A DNA stretch of 63,302 nucleotides, filler included, from Octopus bimaculoides (lineage: Eukaryota), in NCBI RefSeq assembly GCF_001194135.2. It is 7 parts of 6 records of this genome, joined end to end, with 100 filler letters (N's around TTAATTAATTAA, not from the genome) between each part and the next. Parts side by side here need not be neighbours in the genome. Positions count along the whole stretch, not along the records: positions 36,703 to 49,214 come from NC_069001.1; 6 more parts are not named here. One strand, 5' to 3'. Under the pieces are notes generated by a model. That model searched no databases and was not told the origin of the DNA. It saw nothing but the letters and a program-made list of their open reading frames with translations. Shown here in pieces: positions 38,826-49,214 of this stretch; positions within the stretch are counted from its first letter, which is position 1, and every line of letters starts with the position of its first letter. Made by a program: the position numbers and the translations under genes.

Positions 38826-39018
38826 TTCTGTTGTGTCTGGGTAGAGTCATTCTCTTTTAGTGCTTTATAATTTAACACACCGGCAGACTAGTGAAAAGGT
38901 TGCAAGACGCGACGGAAATTTTAGAAAAATAAATAAGAAATGAGTGGAAACTGAACCGGTGAGTGTGTTAAATTATATGGCTACTAAAAGAGAATGACTC
39001 TCCCCAGATGCAACAGTA
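38826..39018. mobile_element. MITE with about 60-bp terminal inverted repeats
   Basis: Left CTGTTGTGTCTGGGTAGAGTCATTCTCTTTTAGTGCTTTATAATTTAACACAC pairs with right GTGTGTTAAATTATATGGCTACTAAAAGAGAATGACTCTCCCCAGATGCAACAG; TA-rich flanks. Confidence 0.85.
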
Positions 39019-39082
39019 TATGCTTCAACACACGAACTCACATAATCTTCCAAACCAAATCCCAAAACGAAATATATCTATC

Positions 39083-39132
<50 letters not shown>

Positions 39133-39207
39133 AAACTTACTTGGAAGAGGACGCGTGGCGTTCAATCATATAATAATATAAATAATATATATATATATAT
39201 ATATTTG

Positions 39208-39238
<31 letters not shown>

Positions 39239-39313
39239 CTCACACATATATGCACTCATGCATTCACTCATATACGCGTGTACATATATATGCACATACA
39301 TAGTCGGTGAGTC

Positions 39314-39347
<34 letters not shown>

Positions 39348-39401
39348 CACACACATACATACACATATGTACATATTTATATGTATGTATATATTCTCAA
39401 A

Positions 39402-39432
<31 letters not shown>

Positions 39433-39441
39433 GTATATATG

Positions 39442-39504
<63 letters not shown>

Positions 39505-39764
39505 NNNNNNNNNNNNNNNNNNNNNNNNNNNNNNNNNNNNNNNNNNNNNNNNNNNNNNNNNNNNNNNNNNNNNNNNNNNNNNNNNNNNNNNNNNNNNNNN
39601 NNNNNNNNNNNNNNNNNNNNNNNNNNNNNNNNNNNNNNNNNNNNNNNNNNNNNNNNNNNNNNNNNNNNNNNNNNNNNNNNNNNNNNNNNNNNNNNNNNNN
39701 NNNNNNNNNNNNNNNNNNNNNNNNNNNNNNNNNNNNNNNNNNNNNNNNNNNNNNNNNNCTTACA

Positions 39765-39850
39765 CATATATTTATTCTTTTACTTGTTTCAGTCATTTGA
39801 CTGCAGCCATGCACCAACTTGAAGGGTTTTCAGTCAAAGAAATCGACCCC
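39765..39850 (-). mobile_element. SINE family A 3' tail fragment
   Basis: TATTCTTTTACTTGTTTCAGTCATTTGACTGCAGCCATGC is the reverse complement of the tail at about 10140-10180. Confidence 0.8.
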
Positions 39851-39851
39851 A

Positions 39852-39890
<39 letters not shown>

Positions 39891-40793
39891 TGAGTACAAA
39901 CTTATACATATATAGAGATATGTACATATATACATAGTAATATGTATAGATGCATAACATACCTTCACGCAGACAGTTAAATCTGTTTAAAAATGCGATG
40001 TTCACGGTTGTTAGAAAGTTGATTAGAAATAGGTCTGCTGCATCAGGACTTCCCTATGGCTAAACAACATCAGTAACAACAACATCCAAAAATCTCTCGA
40101 ACATATTTACTATACACAACGACGACGGCGACTCCATAACGATATCACTTCCTCTTCCTCTTCCTCTTTATCTCACGCTCTTTCTCTTTACTTCTATCTC
40201 TCCCTTCCTCTCGTCTGCTTCCCAGACAGACGTTCTTGGCTGGCAGGCTTGCTGGCTGGTTGGTCAGTAATGGTGGTAAATCGAGTGATTGGCATTAGAG
40301 AACTTCTCTGAGAGCAGAGTTTCGGTGTCGTTCACCCTCCGTAAAGAAAACCCGAAACAGTGGAACCAACGGCAGGGCTTTTATATGCTTGCTCAATCTT
40401 TTATGAACAGCTGTCAAATCTTCTCCAAATCACCCACACTCACTCATAAAAACACGCATACACATACACACATACGCATATATTCACGCAACTTAAGGTT
40501 GTTTTTATTTTTTAAACGTAATGTAGTACTTTTTGGATACTTTGTGGCCTTTCTGAAAGAGACAGTATGGTCACAACTGGAGTGTCTTTATTGATAGATC
40601 TGTTGCTGGATCATGACTGACTTGGGGATAAGCAACCACAACGACAACAACAATAACAGCAGCAACAAAAACAACAAAAACAACGGCTACAACGAAAGTT
40701 TCTGAACACCTCTACGAAGCCCTTTTTGGTTGTCAACAGGAGACGATCGATCTTATCTCTCTCTCTCTCCCCCTCTCGCTATCTGTCTGCCTG

Positions 40794-40843
<50 letters not shown>

Positions 40844-40877
40844 AGTCCATCTATCAATCTCTCTATCTCTCTCTCTC

Positions 40878-40926
<49 letters not shown>

Positions 40927-41122
40927 ATCTATCTGCCAATTTCTTTCTCTCCTTCTTTCTTTCTCTCCTTCTTTCCTCTACATTCCTTTCTTCACTCTAT
41001 CTCATTCATTCCTCCATATTTCTATTCCTCTTTTCCGTTCATCCGTTCTTACATTCGTTTCATCCATTCTACTATTCTATTCTCTCTATCTTCTAAACCT
41101 CACCCCCATCAGCTACATCTCC

Positions 41123-41170
<48 letters not shown>

Positions 41171-41903
41171 TTCTCCCTCTCGTTCTGACTACTATTTAGA
41201 ACACTACTAATACTACCTTTATATAGAGAAGCACGCACCTGCACACCCACACACGCGAACACACACACGAACACACACACACACACACACACAAACACAC
41301 ACGCATACACACACACACGTATCACGCACACACACTTACACACACCACACGCATACGCACACACAGACCCCCCACCAACACAAGCGTACGCTTCATAAAA
41401 CAAAACCCACATTTGCATACGTGTATGCGTATATACAGAAAACGCACACACATACATACATAATTATACATACACACGTACACACACACAGACAGACACA
41501 CACACTCACACACGCACGCATACACACACACACACACACATACACACCTATATACACGTACACATAGGAACATACGCACAGGTGTGCACGTCAGGAAATA
41601 ACAAAGCTTTATTACATTTGAGAAGGTGCGCGCGTATACAAATATTCATACACACGCACACTCACACGCACACACACATACACACACACATATCCTGACT
41701 GCAAACACACAGACAAACACGTACTCATATAGACATATACAGACAGACAAACAGACAGACAGAGAGGCAGAAAAACATGCATACATGCATTTGTATTACT
41801 CATATTTAAAATCTGTGAACGTAACTCTACATGTATATATTTATTTACATATGATATATACATCACTTTTTTTATAATACATACACAAATACACACACGC
41901 GCA

Positions 41904-41954
<51 letters not shown>

Positions 41955-42399
41955 ATATATATATATATACACATACACATATATATGCATATATATACAC
42001 GACCACTACCACCATCANNNNNNNNNNNNNNNNNNNNNNNNNNNNNNNNNNNNNNNNNNNNNNNNNNNNNNNNNNNNNNNNNNNNNNNNNNNNNNNNNNN
42101 NNNNNNNNNNNNNNNNNNNNNNNNNNNNNNNNNNNNNNNNNNNNNNNNNNNNNNNNNNNNNNNNNNNNNNNNNNNNNNNNNNNNNNNNNNNNNNNNNNNN
42201 NNNNNNNNNNNNNNNNNNNNNNNNNNNNNNNNNNNNNNNNNNNNNNNNNNNNNNNNNNNNNNNNNNNNNNNNNNNNNNNNNNNNNNNNNNNNNNNNNNNN
42301 NNNNNNNNNNNNNNNNNNNNNNNNNNNNNNNNNNNNNNNNNNNNNNNNNNNNNNNNNNNNNNNNNNNNNNNNNNNNNNNNNNNNNNNNNNNNNNNNNNN

Positions 42400-42681
42400 G
42401 GAACCGGCCGAAGGCGGTGTTAGTGGTCAGTGCCCACTGGTCGGAGCAGATTGCTACGGTGATGGAAGACAAGTCACACTCGCTTTATTACGATTACTAT
42501 GGTTTCCCGGACAGTACATACAACGTGAAGTGGCAAGTTTCTGGCGCTCCGGCCGTGGCGGCCCGGGTGTTGCAGCTGTTTAAGGCAAAAGGAATAAGTT
42601 GTACCAATATTCACAGCCGAGGTCTGGATCATGGAGTGTTTGTACCTCTTAGTTTAATTTGGCCGAGAGCCAATGTCCCAG
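42400..42681 (+). CDS. Exon of a LigB-family (class III) extradiol ring-cleavage dioxygenase, 4,5-DOPA dioxygenase/YgiD-like
   Basis: NRPKAVLVVSAHWSEQIATVMEDKSHSLYYDYYGFPDSTYNVKWQVSGAPAVAARVLQLFKAKGISCTNIHSRGLDHGVFVPLSLIWPRANVP contains the family motifs SAHW, YDxxGFP, GAP and RGLDHGxFVPL. Stop-free, about 52% GC by hand count, ends at CCAG|GTAACA (phase 1). 5' part hidden in gap 42018-42399; no downstream exon seen. Confidence 0.93.
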
Positions 42682-42791
42682 GTAACAAATTTATTATATA
42701 CCATTTTGTATTTGTTATAATCTAACTGTGTGTCTATGTGTGTGTATGTGCGTCCGTCCATCCATCCATCCATCCATCCATCCATCCATCC

Positions 42792-42832
<41 letters not shown>

Positions 42833-43291
42833 GTGAGTGTACACACGTAGAGGCATAAATGTACGGTGCATAAATAAAGTGTGCGCACGTACGTGTAATT
42901 CTACGTGCACGGGTATGTATGTATATGTGCGTATGTGTGTATGTATATTTACATACACACTGTATGTAAATATACACTGTAGGCATGTATGTGTGCATAT
43001 TTATGCACATAAGTATGTATGTTTATATATNNNNNNNNNNTATATATACACACACACACTCAGCTAGCTATCAGTCTATCACTTGATCGATCGATCGATG
43101 GATCGATCAAATTTACTACATAGATATACGTAGCGTATACGTAAGCATAATATATATGCGTGCATGTATGTAGAATAGGCGTATATGTTTATACTTACAT
43201 ATTTTCGTGTATGTTTTCTATGAGTATACAAAGAGTAAAAGTACGGATTTGCATCTGGTATTTACTTAAATTGTCAGGAAATATGTAAATA

Positions 43292-43326
<35 letters not shown>

Positions 43327-43553
43327 ATGTGTGTCGGTATCTCTGTATCTCTGTATCTCTGTATCTCTGTATAAATAAATATTTATATGTGTATATATNN
43401 NNNNNNNNNNNNNNNNNNNNNNNNNNNNNNNNNNNNNNNNNNNNNNNNNNNNNNNNNNNNNNNNNNNNNNNNNNNNNNNNNNNNNNNNNNNNNNNNNNNN
43501 NNNNNNNNNNNNNNNNNNNNNNNNNNNNATATATATATATATGCATGTACGTA

Positions 43554-43658
<105 letters not shown>

Positions 43659-43986
43659 GCATATCTATCTATCTATCTATCTGATTGTAAATACATGCAT
43701 CTTGTGGAGTATTTGTTTAGGTAAATATAAATAAACTCACACGGACGTATATGTATATACACATACACGCATACATACATACATACATACATACAAAAGG
43801 ATGCTGAAGAGCTCCTAGCTTTGGGTAAAAGAAAATTACAGAAGAATCAGTTAATTACGATTTTATTCAACATATTCCCTTCTCAGATTCACACAATTAT
43901 TGCAGCAGTGTTGCAGTTTTTCTCAGCCCTTTTGTAACACTGTTAAAGCTAGGAACTTTTCAGTACACAAGCACCGCCCCACTCCC

Positions 43987-44027
<41 letters not shown>

Positions 44028-44173
44028 TTGTATGTATATATGTACATGCATACATATGTACATACATACAATACATACATGCATCATGCAAACGAACATA
44101 CATACTCGCACAACACACAGGCGCCCACACAAACACACACACACACACACACGCATACACACACACACACACG

Positions 44174-44216
<43 letters not shown>

Positions 44217-44709
44217 GTATATATATATATATACATGCATACATACATACATACATACATCATAAAAACGAACATACATACTCACACAATACACGGGCGC
44301 GCACACAAACACACATACACATACAAACACTCACACACACACACGCACACACACGCGCACACATATAGGAGTCTATGTGTGTGTGTGCGCGTGGCGGGGT
44401 GTCTTAGTTCTTGATGGAGGGGTGGCGTAGATGTAACACCGTTATATTTGGCGTCTGATGGTCATTTTTGATGCTCGACTTAATCCATCCCTGCCAAGAT
44501 ATGAATAGAGACGATTTGTTCCAAAGACAAACTGGGAAAGAGAGAAAAAGAGAACAGAAGTCTTGGATTACATAACTGGGATTATAGTATTTGTGCCCCA
44601 CGAAAGGATAAAAGGCAGATATAAGACGGCGGCTTTTGAACTTAGAGAATAGAGCACTGGAACGGAGACTACGATATGTTCAGTAGGGTTCTCTGACGCA
44701 CTGCACACA

Positions 44710-44797
<88 letters not shown>

Positions 44798-44804
44798 CTT
44801 CCAC

Positions 44805-44965
44805 TTGTTTCAGCGATTAGACTGTAGCCATATAGGGGCAACATGGTACTTATTTTTTTAAAGTGTGGTACTTATTCTATCGTTGTCTTTCACCAAACCG
44901 CTAAGTTACGGGGACGTAGACGCACCAGTATCGGTTGTCAAGCGATGCTAGTGGACAAACACAGA
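44805..44965 (-). mobile_element. SINE family A tail fragment
   Basis: CCGCTAAGTTACGGGGACGTA..CACCAGTATCGGTTGTCAAGCGATG..GGACAAACACAGAC is the reverse complement of the family A tail. Confidence 0.8.
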
Positions 44966-45470
44966 CACAGACGAATATATATGTGTATACATACGTACAT
45001 ATATATATGTGTGTGTATATATATATTTACATATATATATATGTACATATATGTATATTTATGTACATATATGTATATATGTACATATATATGTACATAT
45101 ATGTATATTTATGTACATATATGTANNNNNNNNNNNNNNNNNNNNNNNNNNNNNNNNNNNNNNNNNNNNNNNNNNNNNNNNNNNNNNNNNNNNNNNNNNN
45201 NNNNNNNNNNNNNNNNNNNNNNNNNNNNNNNNNNNNNNNNNNNNNNNNNNNNNNNNNNNNNNNNNNNNNNNNNNNNNNNNNNNNNNNNNNNNNNNNNNNN
45301 NNNNNNNNNNNNNNNNNNNNNNNNNNNNNNNNNNNNNNNNNNNNNNNNNNNNNNNNNNNNNNNNNNNNNNNNNNNNNNNNNNNNNNNNNNNNNNNNNNNN
45401 NNNNNNNNNNNNNNNNNNNNNNNNNNNNNNNNNNNNNNNNNNNNNNNNNNNNNNNNNNNNNNNNNNNNNN

Positions 45471-45527
<57 letters not shown>

Positions 45528-45786
45528 TACATATGTGTGTGTGTATATATATATATAGATATCAGTGGGGCAGCTGATGATGGGGCGGGGTGTTAGGTTG
45601 GTATAGCTGTTATTGTATGTGGAATAGTTTTATAAGACACCTATTTGCTATATACTCATGTATACGCATAAATGCACACACACACACATATGTATATATA
45701 TATGTATATATACTTATACACACACTTGTATATATACGCATGTATATATATATCTCTCTATATATATGTAGATATGTATATATCTA

Positions 45787-45836
<50 letters not shown>

Positions 45837-46795
45837 NNNNNNNNNNNNNNNNNNNNNNNNNNNNNNNNNNNNNNNNNNNNNNNNNNNNNNNNNNNNNNNN
45901 NNNNNNNNNNNNNNNNNNNNNNNNNNNNNNNNNNNNNNNNNNNNNNNNNNNNNNNNNNNNNNNNNNNNNNNNNNNNNNNNNNNNNNNNNNNNNNNNNNNN
46001 NNNNNNNNNNNNNNNNNNNNNNNNNNNNNNNNNNNNNNNNNNNNNNNNNNNNNNNNNNNNNNNNNNNNNNNNNNNNNNNNNNNNNNNNNNNNNNNNNNNN
46101 NNNNNNNNNNNNNNNNNNNNNNNNNNNNNNNNNNNNNNNNNNNNNNNNNNNNNNNNNNNNNNNNNNNNNNNNNNNNNNNNNNNNNNNNNNNNNNNNNNNN
46201 NNNNNNNNNNNNNNNNNNNNNNNNNNNNNNNNNNNNNNNNNNNNNNNNNNNNNNNNNNNNNNNNNNNNNNNNNNNNNNNNNNNNNNNNNNNNNNNNNNNN
46301 NNNNNNNNNNNNNNNNNNNNNNNNNNNNNNNNNNNNNNNNNNNNNNNNNNNNNNNNNNNNNNNNNNNNNNNNNNNNNNNNNNNNNNNNNNNNNNNNNNNN
46401 NNNNNNNNNNNNNNNNNNNNNNNNNNNNNNNNNNNNNNNNNNNNNNNNNNNNNNNNNNNNNNNNNNNNNNNNNNNNNNNNNNNNNNNNNNNNNNNNNNNN
46501 NNNNNNNNNNNNNNNNNNNNNNNNNNNNNNNNNNNNNNNNNNNNNNNNNNNNNNNNNNNNNNNNNNNNNNNNNNNNNNNNNNNNNNNNNNNNNNNNNNNN
46601 NNNNNNNNNNNNNNNNNNNNNNNNNNNNNNNNNNNNNNNNNNNNNNNNNNNNNNNNNNNNNNNNNNNNNNNNNNNNNNNNNTATATATATATATATATAT
46701 ATATATATGGATATATATATATATACACGCACACATACATTTATAATGCATGCACACACACATACACTTACATACACACACACACTTACACACAC

Positions 46796-46826
<31 letters not shown>

Positions 46827-47346
46827 TTCATACGCACTTGCATGACTGGATCTTGGCGAGAATTTGCAGCCACGAGTCTTCCGGTGTTCCATCAACAATA
46901 AACAAAACAAGATTCATTCAGTTATGTTTTTATGCGGCTGAATATTCTGTAGAACACATGAACATTCAACATTATTCTCAGACCCAGACTAATCAACATA
47001 ACACTGTATTATAAAGTTGTACTTGTTAAATGATGAGTACAAGTCCATCCGACAGGTTTCCGTACAGTGTCCCCTCTACTCAGATTCACTCATAGGGTTG
47101 GGTGTGACTCGAATATATAGAAAGTGGTACTATCCCTTCCTATTCACATTCTTTGTTTCAGTGTGTGTGTGTATGCGTGTGTATATATTTTATGTATATG
47201 TGTGTGTTTGCGTGTATACACACTCACAGACATACATATATACACATATATATATATATATATAAATATATATATACATATACATATACATACATACATA
47301 CATACATAAACACATACATACAAACATACATATATATATCTATATA

Positions 47347-47506
47347 TAGGCGCAAGAGTGGCTGTATAGTAAGTAGCTTGCTTACCAACCACATGGTTCC
47401 GGGTTCAGTCCCTGTGCGTGGTATCTTTGGCTAGTGTCTTCTACTATAGCCTCGGACCGACCAAATCCTTGAGTTGATTTGGTAGACGGAAACTGAAAGA
47501 ATCTCA

Positions 47507-47544
<38 letters not shown>

Positions 47545-47740
47545 TTGTATGTTTGTGTGTCTGTGTTTGTCCCCCTCCATCATTTGACAACCGATGCTGG
47601 TGTGTTTACGTCCCGTAAATTAGCGGCTCGGCAAAAGAGACCAATAGGATAAGTCCTGGGGTCGATTTGTTCGACTAAAGGCGGTGCTCCAGCATGGCCG
47701 CAGTCAAATGACAGAAACAAATAAAAGAATAAAAGAATAA
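47347..47740 (+). mobile_element. SINE family A, full length
   Basis: Head GGCGCAAGAGTGGCTGTATAGTAAGTAGCTTGCTT..GGTTCCGGGTTCAGTCCC, internal (TG)n, standard tail. Confidence 0.9.
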
Positions 47741-47774
47741 AAGAATATAAATGCAAACACAGACATATACACAC

Positions 47775-47965
47775 ATGCTTTTATCTTTCAACCATTGGAC
47801 TGAAAGCTGGGGGAACAGCGTTGAAGGGTTTAAGTCGAACATATCGATCCTAGGACTTATTTTTTCAAGCCTGGTGCTCATTCACTCCATCACTTTTCCC
47901 GAACCGCTAGGTTATGGGAATGGTAACGAACAGCATCGGGTGTCAAGCGGTTGGGGACAAATACA
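47775..47965 (-). mobile_element. SINE family A tail, diverged, inverted relative to the adjacent copy
   Basis: Reverse complement: GTCTGTATTTGTCCCCAACCGCTTGACACCCGATGCTG..AGCGGTTCGG..AATAAGTCCTAGGATCGATATGTTCGACT. Confidence 0.75.
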
Positions 47966-48073
47966 GACTGAGAGATACACACATAGAAACATACATACAT
48001 ATATATGTAAAGAGAGAGAGAGAGGGGGGGAGGGATATATATATATATACATACGTATATACACACATACATA

Positions 48074-48131
<58 letters not shown>

Positions 48132-48530
48132 TATAAAACAGAGATGTGATAAAAGAATAAATGAGGACCTTCATTAACTTACGGCTGTTTCTACTATGAG
48201 ATGCAATAGTCTCATATTTGAGTGCTTGAATAACTCGTTATAGATTCATCGGAGCCCCCCCCCCCACACATACATATATAGGCTCCGATGAAGCTATACG
48301 GTATTATTCAGTCTATTGGAGTATTCCAACAAGTCATAATGTAATCTTTGTATTGTCCGTTTTCATGCCCTGATGATTTTCCACCCTAGATATTTTGAAA
48401 TGCAAGCTTATATATTTGTATATGTTTTGTAGTTCAAATTGGATGTGAAATGAAACAATTGTAGGTGAAGATTAATAAATTACTTCGTTTCCATTGGATC
48501 TCTTCGCTTTGAAACTTATATACATATATA

Positions 48531-49214
48531 CAAAGGTGATACTCAAAAGTAACCGGAAATGTTCTCTGTGGAACAAGCCCGATGTAGTTCAGGATTCCGC
48601 AGCTAGAAGCCAATTTGAGGCGATCCTCAGACATCAGTCTGCCGACCGGTGTCGTAGTCTGGGGTTCTCTGCTACGTGGTGCACCTTTGTTTTGCAGCGT
48701 TTCTCTCCTGTTCGTCGATTTTTGCGATGGCTGAAACGAAGGAACAGAGTGCTTGCTTGGAATTCTGTTTTATGCTGGGGAAAACGGCGGTCGAAACAGT
48801 TGTCACGCATCAAACAGCATACAAGGTCGCTGCTATGAGCAAAACACAAGTTTACACGTGGTTTTCACGCTTTAGGAATGGTCACTTGTTGCTTAAGAAC
48901 CAACCCTCGTTTAGAACAACCGTCGACCTCCCGAACGAATGAAAACATCAGGAAAATTCATGAACTGATCTTAGAGGGCCATCATCAAACAATTGACGAA
49001 CTTGTTGATATGACTGCTTTGTCCTGGAGCTGCTGCCAACGAATTTTGAGCGAGGAATTGCAAATGAAAAGGTTTGCAGCAAAATTTGTGCCTCACTTAC
49101 TCACGGATGATCAAAAGCAGTCAGGGCTGAATGCGTGTCGTGAACTGAAAGAACAGTTGGACGTTGATCCAGACCTTTTTTCAAAGGTCATCACTGGTGA
49201 CGAAAGCTGGTGAT
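48531..49214 (+). mobile_element. Mariner transposon 5' half, frameshifted transposase
   Basis: TIR-like start TA|CAAAGGTGATACTCAAAAGTAACCGGAA; ATG at 48727 MAETKEQSACLEFCFMLGKTAVET..QVYTWFSRFRNG; then PSTSRTNENIRKI..KFVPHLLT..VITGDESW (first catalytic Asp); cut by the linker. Confidence 0.93.

What the first reader, a model, noticed from the sequence alone, without database searches (positions are those of the whole stretch)
42400..42681. Spliced 4,5-DOPA dioxygenase/YgiD-like (LigB class III) gene in an apparent cephalopod genome
Seen: the only clear host coding exon here, with SAHW, YDYYGFP and RGLDHGVFVPL motifs, about 52% GC in an AT-rich background, and a phase-1 GT donor right after ..ANVP, so it looks like an intron-containing nuclear gene rather than bacterial contamination. 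Established: this family includes E. coli YgiD and plant DODA, which opens L-DOPA to betalamic acid. Inference: the family is not a familiar animal enzyme, and cephalopods handle DOPA heavily (ink melanin), so it may represent an unexamined DOPA/catechol ring-cleavage route for pigment or detoxification, gained horizontally or retained patchily. The residues that separate betalain-type DODA from other LigB enzymes lie downstream and are not visible.
Basis: partly seen in the sequence, partly recalled or inferred. Interest (0 to 1): 0.72.

Follow-up and report, generated by a model that had tools for sequence, protein, structure and literature searches.

The report
Octopus DOPA-dioxygenase-like gene exon
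This is one real coding exon of an octopus gene for an iron-dependent catechol ring-opening enzyme (DOPA-dioxygenase type); the gene is already in public octopus annotations and is shared by all major mollusc groups, so it is genuine but largely ordinary, and its function in molluscs has not been tested.

Summary
Window 42400-42681 (+) is an open 93-codon stretch (51.8% GC against 35.9% in the rest of the piece). It matches Pfam LigB (E 3.7e-17) and solved plant 4,5-DOPA dioxygenases (E 1e-17), and it ends at a phase-1 CAG|GTAACA donor. Its 5' end is cut by a 382-nt assembly gap.

It is not contamination and it is not new. It is 100% identical to residues 1-73 of RefSeq XP_052831521.1 (LOC106880842, Octopus bimaculoides) and 99% identical to "5-DOPA dioxygenase extradiol-like" CAI9738384.1 (O. 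vulgaris). The gene spans about 126-138 kb, so no other exon lies in this piece.

Orthologues are annotated in Argonauta, cuttlefish, gastropods and bivalves. An Octopus paralogue, Solemya and Pomacea have the phase-1 intron at the same position as the window. Mollusc sequences form one clade (NJ bootstrap 91). No other named animal phylum appeared among the best hits, which were protists and bacteria at about 40-44% identity.

All five key histidines of beet DODA are conserved across the orthologues, and two of them lie in this exon. The plant betalain-type motif is absent.

The most likely function is Fe(II) extradiol cleavage of L-DOPA or a related catechol. The substrate is unproven, and conservation in ink-less bivalves argues against an ink-specific role.

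The parts
42400..42681 (+). Visible part of a coding exon of the octopus DODA-type (LigB class III) extradiol dioxygenase gene (O. bimaculoides LOC106880842 or its equivalent). Codons run from 42402. Base 42681 (G) is the first base of a split Val codon.
   Evidence: Open frame of 93 codons. Pfam LigB E 3.7e-17. 100% identical to XP_052831521.1 residues 1-73 and 98.9% to CAI9738384.1 residues 56-148. Carries the equivalents of beet DODA His53 (SAHW, Fe ligand) and His119 (LDHG, catalytic) (PMC11926856). dN/dS is about 0.12 against the cuttlefish-like orthologue.
42682..42687 (+). 5' splice donor GTAACA (CAG|GTAACA), phase 1.
   Evidence: Sequence read. Protein homology ends at 42680. Same position and phase in the O. 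bimaculoides paralogue LOC106874817 (L005), Solemya velum (L006..HIP G|GTACGT) and Pomacea (L001..KVP G|GTACAA). Orthologues continue with V(L/F)Q(V/L)SL, which fits G + TN = Val.
42018..42399 (.). Assembly gap (382 N) hiding the 5' part of the exon. It may also hide the whole N-terminal coding region (about 55 codons, including the first Fe-ligand His in LFLSHGGGPS).
   Evidence: Gap bounds. O. vulgaris and Argonauta proteins have 55-56 residues before NRPKAV. In the paralogue and in Solemya the first coding exon runs uninterrupted from ATG to the ..IP|G donor. The RefSeq O. bimaculoides model starts at MEDKSH, the first Met after this gap.

Best explanation
The segment is a genuine coding exon of a nuclear octopus gene. 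It is most likely the first coding exon, with its start lost in an assembly gap. The gene is the one annotated as LOC106880842 in Octopus bimaculoides and as '4,5-DOPA dioxygenase extradiol-like' in O. vulgaris and Argonauta. It encodes a DODA/YgiD-type class III extradiol dioxygenase of about 288 residues.

Shown: family and fold membership; a conserved three-histidine metal site and two catalytic histidines; spliced structure with a mollusc-wide intron; purifying selection; and expression of the decapod orthologue as mRNA.

Inferred mechanism: Fe(II) held by three His binds a catechol substrate through both hydroxyls. The LDHG histidine, which is encoded in this exon, deprotonates the substrate. 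O2 then adds and the ring is opened next to the diol. With L-DOPA this would give seco-DOPA, which cyclises spontaneously to betalamic acid and/or muscaflavin.

The physiological substrate (L-DOPA or another catechol) and the biological role in molluscs are not established. Conservation across bivalves, gastropods and cephalopods points to a general mollusc catechol or tyrosine-derived pathway and not to an ink-specific one.
For: Family: Pfam LigB E 3.7e-17 for the exon and 6e-30 for the full Argonauta orthologue. The closest solved structures are plant 4,5-DOPA dioxygenases, at E 5e-40 for the full-length orthologue, and then YgiD. The AF2 model of the orthologue (pLDDT 89.7, pTM 0.90) matches 9J2L and 8IN2 with TM 0.82-0.89 and YgiD with 0.75/0.88.

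Active site: Argonauta H18, H68, H133, H189 and H249 align with YgiD H22 and with beet H53, H119, H175 and H229. They are invariant or nearly so in 20 mollusc-type sequences. The roles of these residues come from PMC11926856.

Identity of the gene: 100% and 99% identity to octopus proteins. The gene spans 126-138 kb on 40-47 Mb contigs.

Shared intron.

Mollusc-wide distribution and monophyly.

Expression: the cuttlefish-like orthologue occurs as 1.2-1.4 kb contigs carrying one uninterrupted ORF, indexed in 56 blocks of the Logan collection. These must be spliced mRNA.

Constraint: dN/dS about 0.12.
Against: No enzyme assay or expression data exist for this octopus gene. The first and third Fe ligands and the second catalytic His are seen only in orthologous or annotated proteins, not in this piece. 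The protein scores below the NCBIfam YgiD equivalog cut-off (119 against 233 bits). It lacks the plant betalain-type motif after the catalytic His (THTFEKMGQ in place of THPSNGTP), so L-DOPA specificity cannot be read from the sequence. Non-betalain plant LigB homologues act on other catechols (own knowledge). No betalain-like pigment is known from molluscs (own knowledge; no paper found).
Confidence: 0.9

Rival explanations
1. The enzyme is a working extradiol dioxygenase, but its natural substrate is not L-DOPA. It could be another catechol, for example dopamine- or DOPAC-type catabolites, dietary or algal phenolics, or quinone-tanning precursors. In that case it serves catabolism or detoxification and not pigment formation.
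For: It falls below the YgiD equivalog cut-off. The plant DODA motif is absent. The O. bimaculoides protein has a weak secondary similarity to 3,4-dihydroxyphenylacetate 2,3-dioxygenase (TIGR02298, E 6e-4). The gene is conserved in molluscs with very different pigment biology.
Against: The nearest characterised and solved relatives all accept L-DOPA: plant DODAs and YgiD (PMC11926856). Bacterial, fungal and tardigrade homologues without the plant motif also make betalamic acid (PMC13263728).
Confidence: 0.4
2. The exon is a decaying relic or pseudogene fragment and the gene no longer makes a functional protein.
For: Only one exon is visible here. The exon start lies in a gap. The O. vulgaris model has an aberrant C-terminus, and the O. 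bimaculoides model is N-terminally truncated.
Against: The 93 codons are open and both key His residues are intact. dN/dS is about 0.12. Identity to Argonauta is 84% over this exon and 89% in the local alignment, whose subject is the O. vulgaris model. The O. bimaculoides model has an intact C-terminal half with GSGFMTH and AHPRLEHFLPL. The model defects are explained by the gap and by mis-annotation of the last exon.
Confidence: 0.03
3. The segment is bacterial or other foreign DNA mis-assembled into the animal scaffold.
For: The exon is GC-rich (51.8%) compared with its surroundings (35.9%). The family is mostly bacterial, with thousands of bacterial hits.
Against: It has a canonical phase-1 GT donor at an intron position shared by other molluscs. 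It is embedded in microsatellite-rich animal sequence next to a mariner remnant. The best bacterial identities are only about 40-50%, whereas identity to octopus proteins is 99-100%. A GC rise in exons is normal in AT-rich genomes.
Confidence: 0.01

Closest known systems
Octopus bimaculoides LOC106880842 (XP_052831521.1); Octopus vulgaris CAI9738384.1 and Argonauta hians GAB1606918.1, '4,5-DOPA dioxygenase extradiol-like'
   Same: This is the same gene. Identity is 100% over residues 1-73 of the O. bimaculoides protein, 98.9% to O. vulgaris and 83.9% to Argonauta over the exon. All three sit in one 90%-identity cluster.
   Different: The window shows Ile where O. vulgaris has Val (SEQ-I/V-ATV). 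The RefSeq model lacks the N-terminus because of the gap. The C-terminus of the O. vulgaris model looks mis-annotated.
Plant 4,5-DOPA extradiol dioxygenases (Beta vulgaris 8IN2, Mirabilis jalapa 9J2L)
   Same: Same fold (TM 0.82-0.89). Same 3-His Fe site and the same two catalytic His (PMC11926856). About 30% identity.
   Different: It lacks the plant HP(S/A)(N/D)xTP stretch after the catalytic His (THTFEKMGQ). It has a mollusc-type insertion G(M/L)DK.S.AA.FLR near the N-terminus. Activity is untested.
E. coli YgiD (2PW6; NCBIfam NF007914)
   Same: It is the best NCBIfam match. The metal ligands are shared (H22 aligned). TM-score is 0.75/0.88.
   Different: About 25% identity. The score of 119 bits is below the 233-bit equivalog cut-off.
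Animal DODAs already studied: Bombyx mori DODA (Wang, Sun & Zhang 2019) and tardigrade Hypsibius henanensis DODA1 (Li et al. 2024)
   Same: They are animal genes of the same enzyme family, reported to act on L-DOPA. The tardigrade enzyme makes betalains (PMC11657626, PMC13389832, PMC13263728).
   Different: Both are described as lineage-specific horizontal acquisitions. The mollusc gene is phylum-wide with a shared intron.

Membership tests
LigB superfamily (Pfam PF02900, class III extradiol dioxygenases) | Profile match above the curated gathering score | tested here: met
   Exon alone: 62.7 bits against a cut-off of 26.3, E 3.7e-17. Orthologues: 84-110 bits.
DODA/YgiD-type subgroup | Three-histidine metal site (beet H15/H53/H229) in place of the 2-His-1-Glu site of LigB/APD | tested here: met
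   The H53 equivalent (SAHW) is in the window. The H15 equivalent (SHGGGP, aligned to YgiD H22) and the H229 equivalent (AHPRLEH) are present in the Argonauta, O. vulgaris or O. bimaculoides proteins of the same gene and are nearly invariant in 20 sequences. These two lie outside the piece, so they were not seen in the window itself.
DODA/YgiD-type subgroup | Catalytic histidines equivalent to beet H119 and H175 | tested here: met
   H119 equivalent: LDHG in the window. H175 equivalent: GSGFMTH in the O. bimaculoides and Argonauta proteins. Both are invariant in alignment A1.
DODA/YgiD-type subgroup | Fold matches solved DODA/YgiD structures better than other LigB-type enzymes | tested here: met
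   AF2 model of the Argonauta orthologue: pLDDT 89.7. Top PDB matches are 9J2L, 8IN2 and 2PW6 (TM 0.75-0.89). Aminophenol, DHPA and LigAB dioxygenases score lower (TM 0.6-0.7).
E. coli YgiD equivalog (NCBIfam NF007914) | Score at or above the curated equivalog cut-off (233 bits) | tested here: not met
   119 bits for the full-length orthologue and 53.5 bits for the exon. It is a homologue and not an equivalog.
Plant betalain-type DODA | H-P-(S/A)-(N/D)-x-T-P motif directly after the catalytic His (motif recalled from Christinet et al. 2004, own knowledge; visible as THPSNGTP in 8IN2) | tested here: not met
   The orthologue has THTFEKMGQ at that place.
4,5-DOPA dioxygenase (enzyme activity) | Conversion of L-DOPA to 4,5-seco-DOPA and betalamic acid | not testable with these tools
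   This needs recombinant protein and an assay. No publication on a mollusc enzyme was found.
Nuclear spliced mollusc gene (as opposed to contaminant) | Intron at a position and phase shared with orthologues, and a spliced mRNA | tested here: met
   The phase-1 intron after (V/I)P is present in the window, L005, L006 and L001. Uninterrupted ORF across the junction in transcript-like contigs of the decapod orthologue. Splicing of the octopus transcript itself was not tested.

The most novel reading that the evidence does not exclude
Molluscs as a phylum may keep an active L-DOPA extradiol dioxygenase, duplicated in octopuses, that makes betalamic-acid or muscaflavin-type compounds used as pigments, antioxidants or cross-linkers. 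That would be a class of animal metabolites so far shown only in a tardigrade. Among animals the gene may be confined to molluscs and a few unnamed marine lineages, through an ancient transfer or patchy retention.
Probability: 0.15. Interest if true: 0.6.

Novelty: already known. Interest (0 to 1): 0.2.

Why it matters
For this window the result is mainly a clean annotation: one real exon of a gene that is already in the databases. It also explains why the RefSeq O. bimaculoides model is N-terminally truncated, namely an assembly gap.

More broadly, a DODA-type dioxygenase is conserved across cephalopods, gastropods and bivalves. It keeps an intact active site and is under purifying selection, yet no functional study of it turned up in the searchable literature. 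After the tardigrade DODA1/betalain report, a simple enzyme assay on a mollusc protein would be a cheap test of whether DOPA ring-cleavage products exist more widely in animals.

Tried and rejected
1. I searched the whole piece for further exons by tblastn, using a spliced Pomacea model, 15 homologues and the three octopod proteins. Nothing was found beyond 42402-42680. This fits gene spans of 126-138 kb.
2. I tried to fetch the genomic DNA of the O. bimaculoides and O. vulgaris genes. The exon-intron structure of this exact gene beyond the window therefore could not be read, and the identification of the window as O. bimaculoides rests on protein identity plus the match between the gap and the start of the RefSeq model.
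3. Look-ups of the Pomacea and Haliotis proteins found no gene on record. The Pomacea structure was instead read from the Logan contig L001, which encodes nearly the same protein as XP Pomacea P0183.
4. I tried to name the sister sequences of the mollusc clade (P0024, P0302, P0303, P0305, P0018). They come only from Logan or JGI and carry no names. Horizontal gain versus patchy retention therefore stays undecided.
5. Literature searches for a mollusc or cephalopod DODA gave no relevant paper.
6. An Rfam scan of the piece found nothing.
7. Contamination and pseudogene readings were considered and rejected; see the rival explanations.
8. The first word-indexed protein search with the 93-aa peptide missed the octopus proteins. 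Only the exhaustive search found them.

Full report
OBSERVATION. The stretch 42400-42681 on the + strand reads, from 42402, as 93 open codons: NRPKAVLVVSAHWSEQIATVMEDKSHSLYYDYYGFPDSTYNVKWQVSGAPAVAARVLQLFKAKGISCTNIHSRGLDHGVFVPLSLIWPRANVP. A single G follows, and then GTAACA. The exon is 51.8% GC, against 35.9% for the rest of the non-N piece. The peptide matches Pfam LigB (PF02900) at 62.7 bits (cut-off 26.3, E 3.7e-17), covering profile positions 42-132 of 269. It also matches the solved plant 4,5-DOPA dioxygenases 8IN2 and 9J2L at E about 1e-17, and E. coli YgiD (2PW6) at 5e-10. There is one qualification: the exon does not begin at 42400. A 382-nt run of N (42018-42399) abuts it, so the true 5' boundary is hidden.

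WHICH GENE IT IS. The first, word-indexed protein search returned only 15 fragments at 53% identity or less in the table. The exhaustive HMMER search found 2720 relatives and one near-identical protein, P0016 (99%). Cluster look-up names it CAI9738384.1, '5-DOPA dioxygenase extradiol-like [Octopus vulgaris]'. The same 90% cluster holds GAB1606918.1, '4,5-DOPA dioxygenase extradiol-like [Argonauta hians]' (288 aa), and XP_052831521.1, 'uncharacterized protein LOC106880842 [Octopus bimaculoides]' (212 aa). The window exon is 100% identical to residues 1-73 of the O. bimaculoides protein. It is 98.9% identical to O. vulgaris (one Ile/Val difference) and 83.9% identical to Argonauta. The RefSeq O. 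bimaculoides model starts at MEDKSH, which is the first Met after the window's gap. The gap-ridden piece is therefore very probably from the O. bimaculoides assembly, and the truncated model is a consequence of the gap (inference). The gene spans about 126 kb in O. bimaculoides (GCA_001194135.2) and about 138 kb in O. vulgaris. That explains why tblastn with the octopod proteins, a spliced Pomacea model and 15 other homologues finds no other exon in this 12.5-kb piece.

A SPLICED ANIMAL GENE, NOT CONTAMINATION. The donor CAG|GTAACA leaves one base (G) of the next codon, and orthologues continue with Val (VLQVSL..), which fits G+TN. The same phase-1 intron directly after (V/I)P is seen in three other places. 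One is the O. bimaculoides paralogue LOC106874817 (L005, two coding exons, 3.65 kb). Another is the protobranch bivalve Solemya velum (L006..HIP G|GTACGT). The third is a genomic Logan contig (L001) that encodes nearly the same protein as Pomacea canaliculata P0183 (..KVP G|GTACAA; that gene has two further introns). Several unnamed environmental eukaryotic fragments read through into an intron at the same spot (P0002, P0007, P0018). The cuttlefish-like orthologue (P0170; its cluster contains Acanthosepion pharaonis CAE1280060.1) occurs as 1.2-1.4 kb contigs with one uninterrupted ORF across this junction. These contigs are indexed in 56 blocks of the Logan collection. Given genomic introns of tens of kb, they must be spliced mRNA. 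Against that orthologue the exon has pN 0.21, pS 0.70 and dN/dS about 0.12. Synonymous sites are near saturation, so the value is rough, but it indicates purifying selection.

DISTRIBUTION. Searches with the full-length Argonauta protein and with a 20-sequence mollusc-type profile list only molluscs as named animals. These are Octopus (two paralogues in both species), Argonauta, Acanthosepion, Haliotis, Pomacea, Littorina, Batillaria, Solemya, Tegillarca, Pinctada, Saccostrea, Crassostrea gigas (XP_011423503.2, '4,5-DOPA dioxygenase extradiol'), Argopecten, Pecten, Ylistrum and Mya. The next named hits are an oomycete (Achlya), a chrysophyte (Chromulina), other protist transcriptomes and many bacteria, at about 36-44% identity. 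I built a neighbour-joining tree of 277 sequences (264 columns, Kimura distances, 100 bootstraps). In it, all 15 named molluscs plus 18 unnamed transcript-like sequences form one clade (bootstrap 91). Cephalopods form a clade (100). The window's orthologue group (Argonauta plus the cuttlefish-like sequences) is separated from the Octopus paralogue (86), so the duplication probably predates the octopod-decapod split. The immediate sister of the mollusc clade is a set of unnamed eukaryote-like transcripts (P0024, P0302, P0303, P0305). They are 55-60% identical to bivalve proteins, and one relative shows the same intron. I could not name their source. The gene was therefore present in the common ancestor of the sampled mollusc classes. 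Whether it reached that ancestor vertically with loss in most other animals, or by an old transfer, remains open. NJ on this sampling cannot decide it.

HOW IT MOST LIKELY WORKS. The beet DODA structure paper assigns His15, His53 and His229 as Fe(II) ligands and His119 and His175 as catalytic residues (PMC11926856). In the HMMER alignments, Argonauta H68, H133, H189 and H249 align with beet H53, H119, H175 and H229, and H18 aligns with YgiD H22 in the (S/G)HG motif. All five are invariant or nearly invariant in the 20-sequence alignment. Two of them lie in the window exon: SAHW (Fe ligand) and LDHG (the residue proposed to deprotonate the substrate). An AlphaFold2 model of the Argonauta orthologue (pLDDT 89.7, pTM 0.90) matches Mirabilis and Beta DODA (TM 0.82-0.89) and YgiD (0.75/0.88) better than it matches aminophenol, homoprotocatechuate or LigAB dioxygenases. 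The supported mechanism is therefore Fe(II)-dependent extradiol cleavage of a catechol. That L-DOPA is the substrate is inferred only from the nearest characterised relatives. Three points weigh against reading it as certain. The protein is below the NCBIfam YgiD equivalog cut-off (119 against 233 bits). It lacks the plant HP(S/A)(N/D)xTP stretch after the catalytic His (THTFEKMGQ against THPSNGTP; motif from my own knowledge of Christinet et al. 2004). And the gene is conserved in bivalves and gastropods, which make no ink, so a special link to cephalopod ink melanin is not favoured.

COMPARISON WITH WHAT IS KNOWN, AND NOVELTY. The gene is already annotated under this very name in several mollusc genomes. 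[quoted passage not shown] They have also been studied in the tardigrade Hypsibius henanensis (DODA1, betalain synthesis, Li et al. 2024, cited in PMC13389832 and PMC13263728). PMC13263728 describes the tardigrade enzyme as the only one functionally described from an animal. I found no paper on a mollusc or cephalopod member in the searchable library. As a sequence feature this is 'already known'. What remains open is its biochemistry and role in molluscs, and its evolutionary origin.

VERDICT. This is a real, correctly located exon of a known, annotated octopus gene. Interest is low (0.2). The residual novel reading is a phylum-wide DOPA ring-cleavage pathway in molluscs; I put it at about 0.15 probability, and it would be of moderate interest if shown.

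Noticed in passing
window 48676-49213 (+): Remnant of a mariner/Mos1-type transposase. ORF 48676-48942 matches Pfam HTH_48 (E 2.6e-8). A second ORF in another frame (48878-49213) ends ..ITGDESW at the edge of the piece, so the copy is frame-broken and cut off.
   Followed up: partly
window 42018-42399 and six other N runs (38110-38811, 39505-39758, 43031-43040, 43399-43528, 45126-45470, 45837-46681): Seven assembly gaps total 2668 N in 12.5 kb. The gap at 42018-42399 removes the exon start. It probably explains why RefSeq XP_052831521.1 begins at the internal Met (MEDKSH) and lacks the N-terminal Fe-ligand His.
   Followed up: partly
protein P0016 (O. vulgaris CAI9738384.1), last ~45 residues: The C-terminus (..KWNHRKFPDIPTYFPHPTSSDHSTIHSFCRMYKVHNFSFIDDDF) does not match Argonauta or O. 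bimaculoides (..KWVRDVFCNPRLTP..AHPRLEHFLPL..). The third Fe-ligand motif is missing. The last exon of that model is probably mis-annotated.
   Followed up: no
L005 3587-3757 (intron of O. bimaculoides paralogue LOC106874817): A degenerate second copy of the 3' half of coding exon 1 sits just downstream of the real exon. It is about 50% identical at protein level and has an in-frame stop, so it is a decayed local exon duplication.
   Followed up: no
window 36703-49214, e.g. 42760-42832 (ATCT)n just after the donor, 43554-43682 (TATC)n, 40756-40934, 44043-44281, 45688-45836: Very dense di- and tetranucleotide microsatellites (TA, CA, TC, ATCT/TATC). TRF returned 32 rows. Most long 'ORFs' in the piece are translations of these repeats or of N runs and are not genes.
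   Followed up: partly
proteins P0024, P0302, P0303, P0305, P0018 (Logan/JGI/ENA, unnamed): These are eukaryote-like DODA-type sequences that form the sister group of the mollusc clade. They are 55-60% identical to bivalve proteins and carry the DK.S.SADFM motif. P0018 reads into an intron at the same ..IP|G position. The source organisms are unknown, and they could decide between vertical descent and transfer.
   Followed up: partly
protein P0304 (Achlya hypogyna, 518 aa): An oomycete protein about twice the usual length scores among the best non-mollusc hits to the mollusc profile. It may be a tandem or fused LigB-type protein.
   Followed up: no
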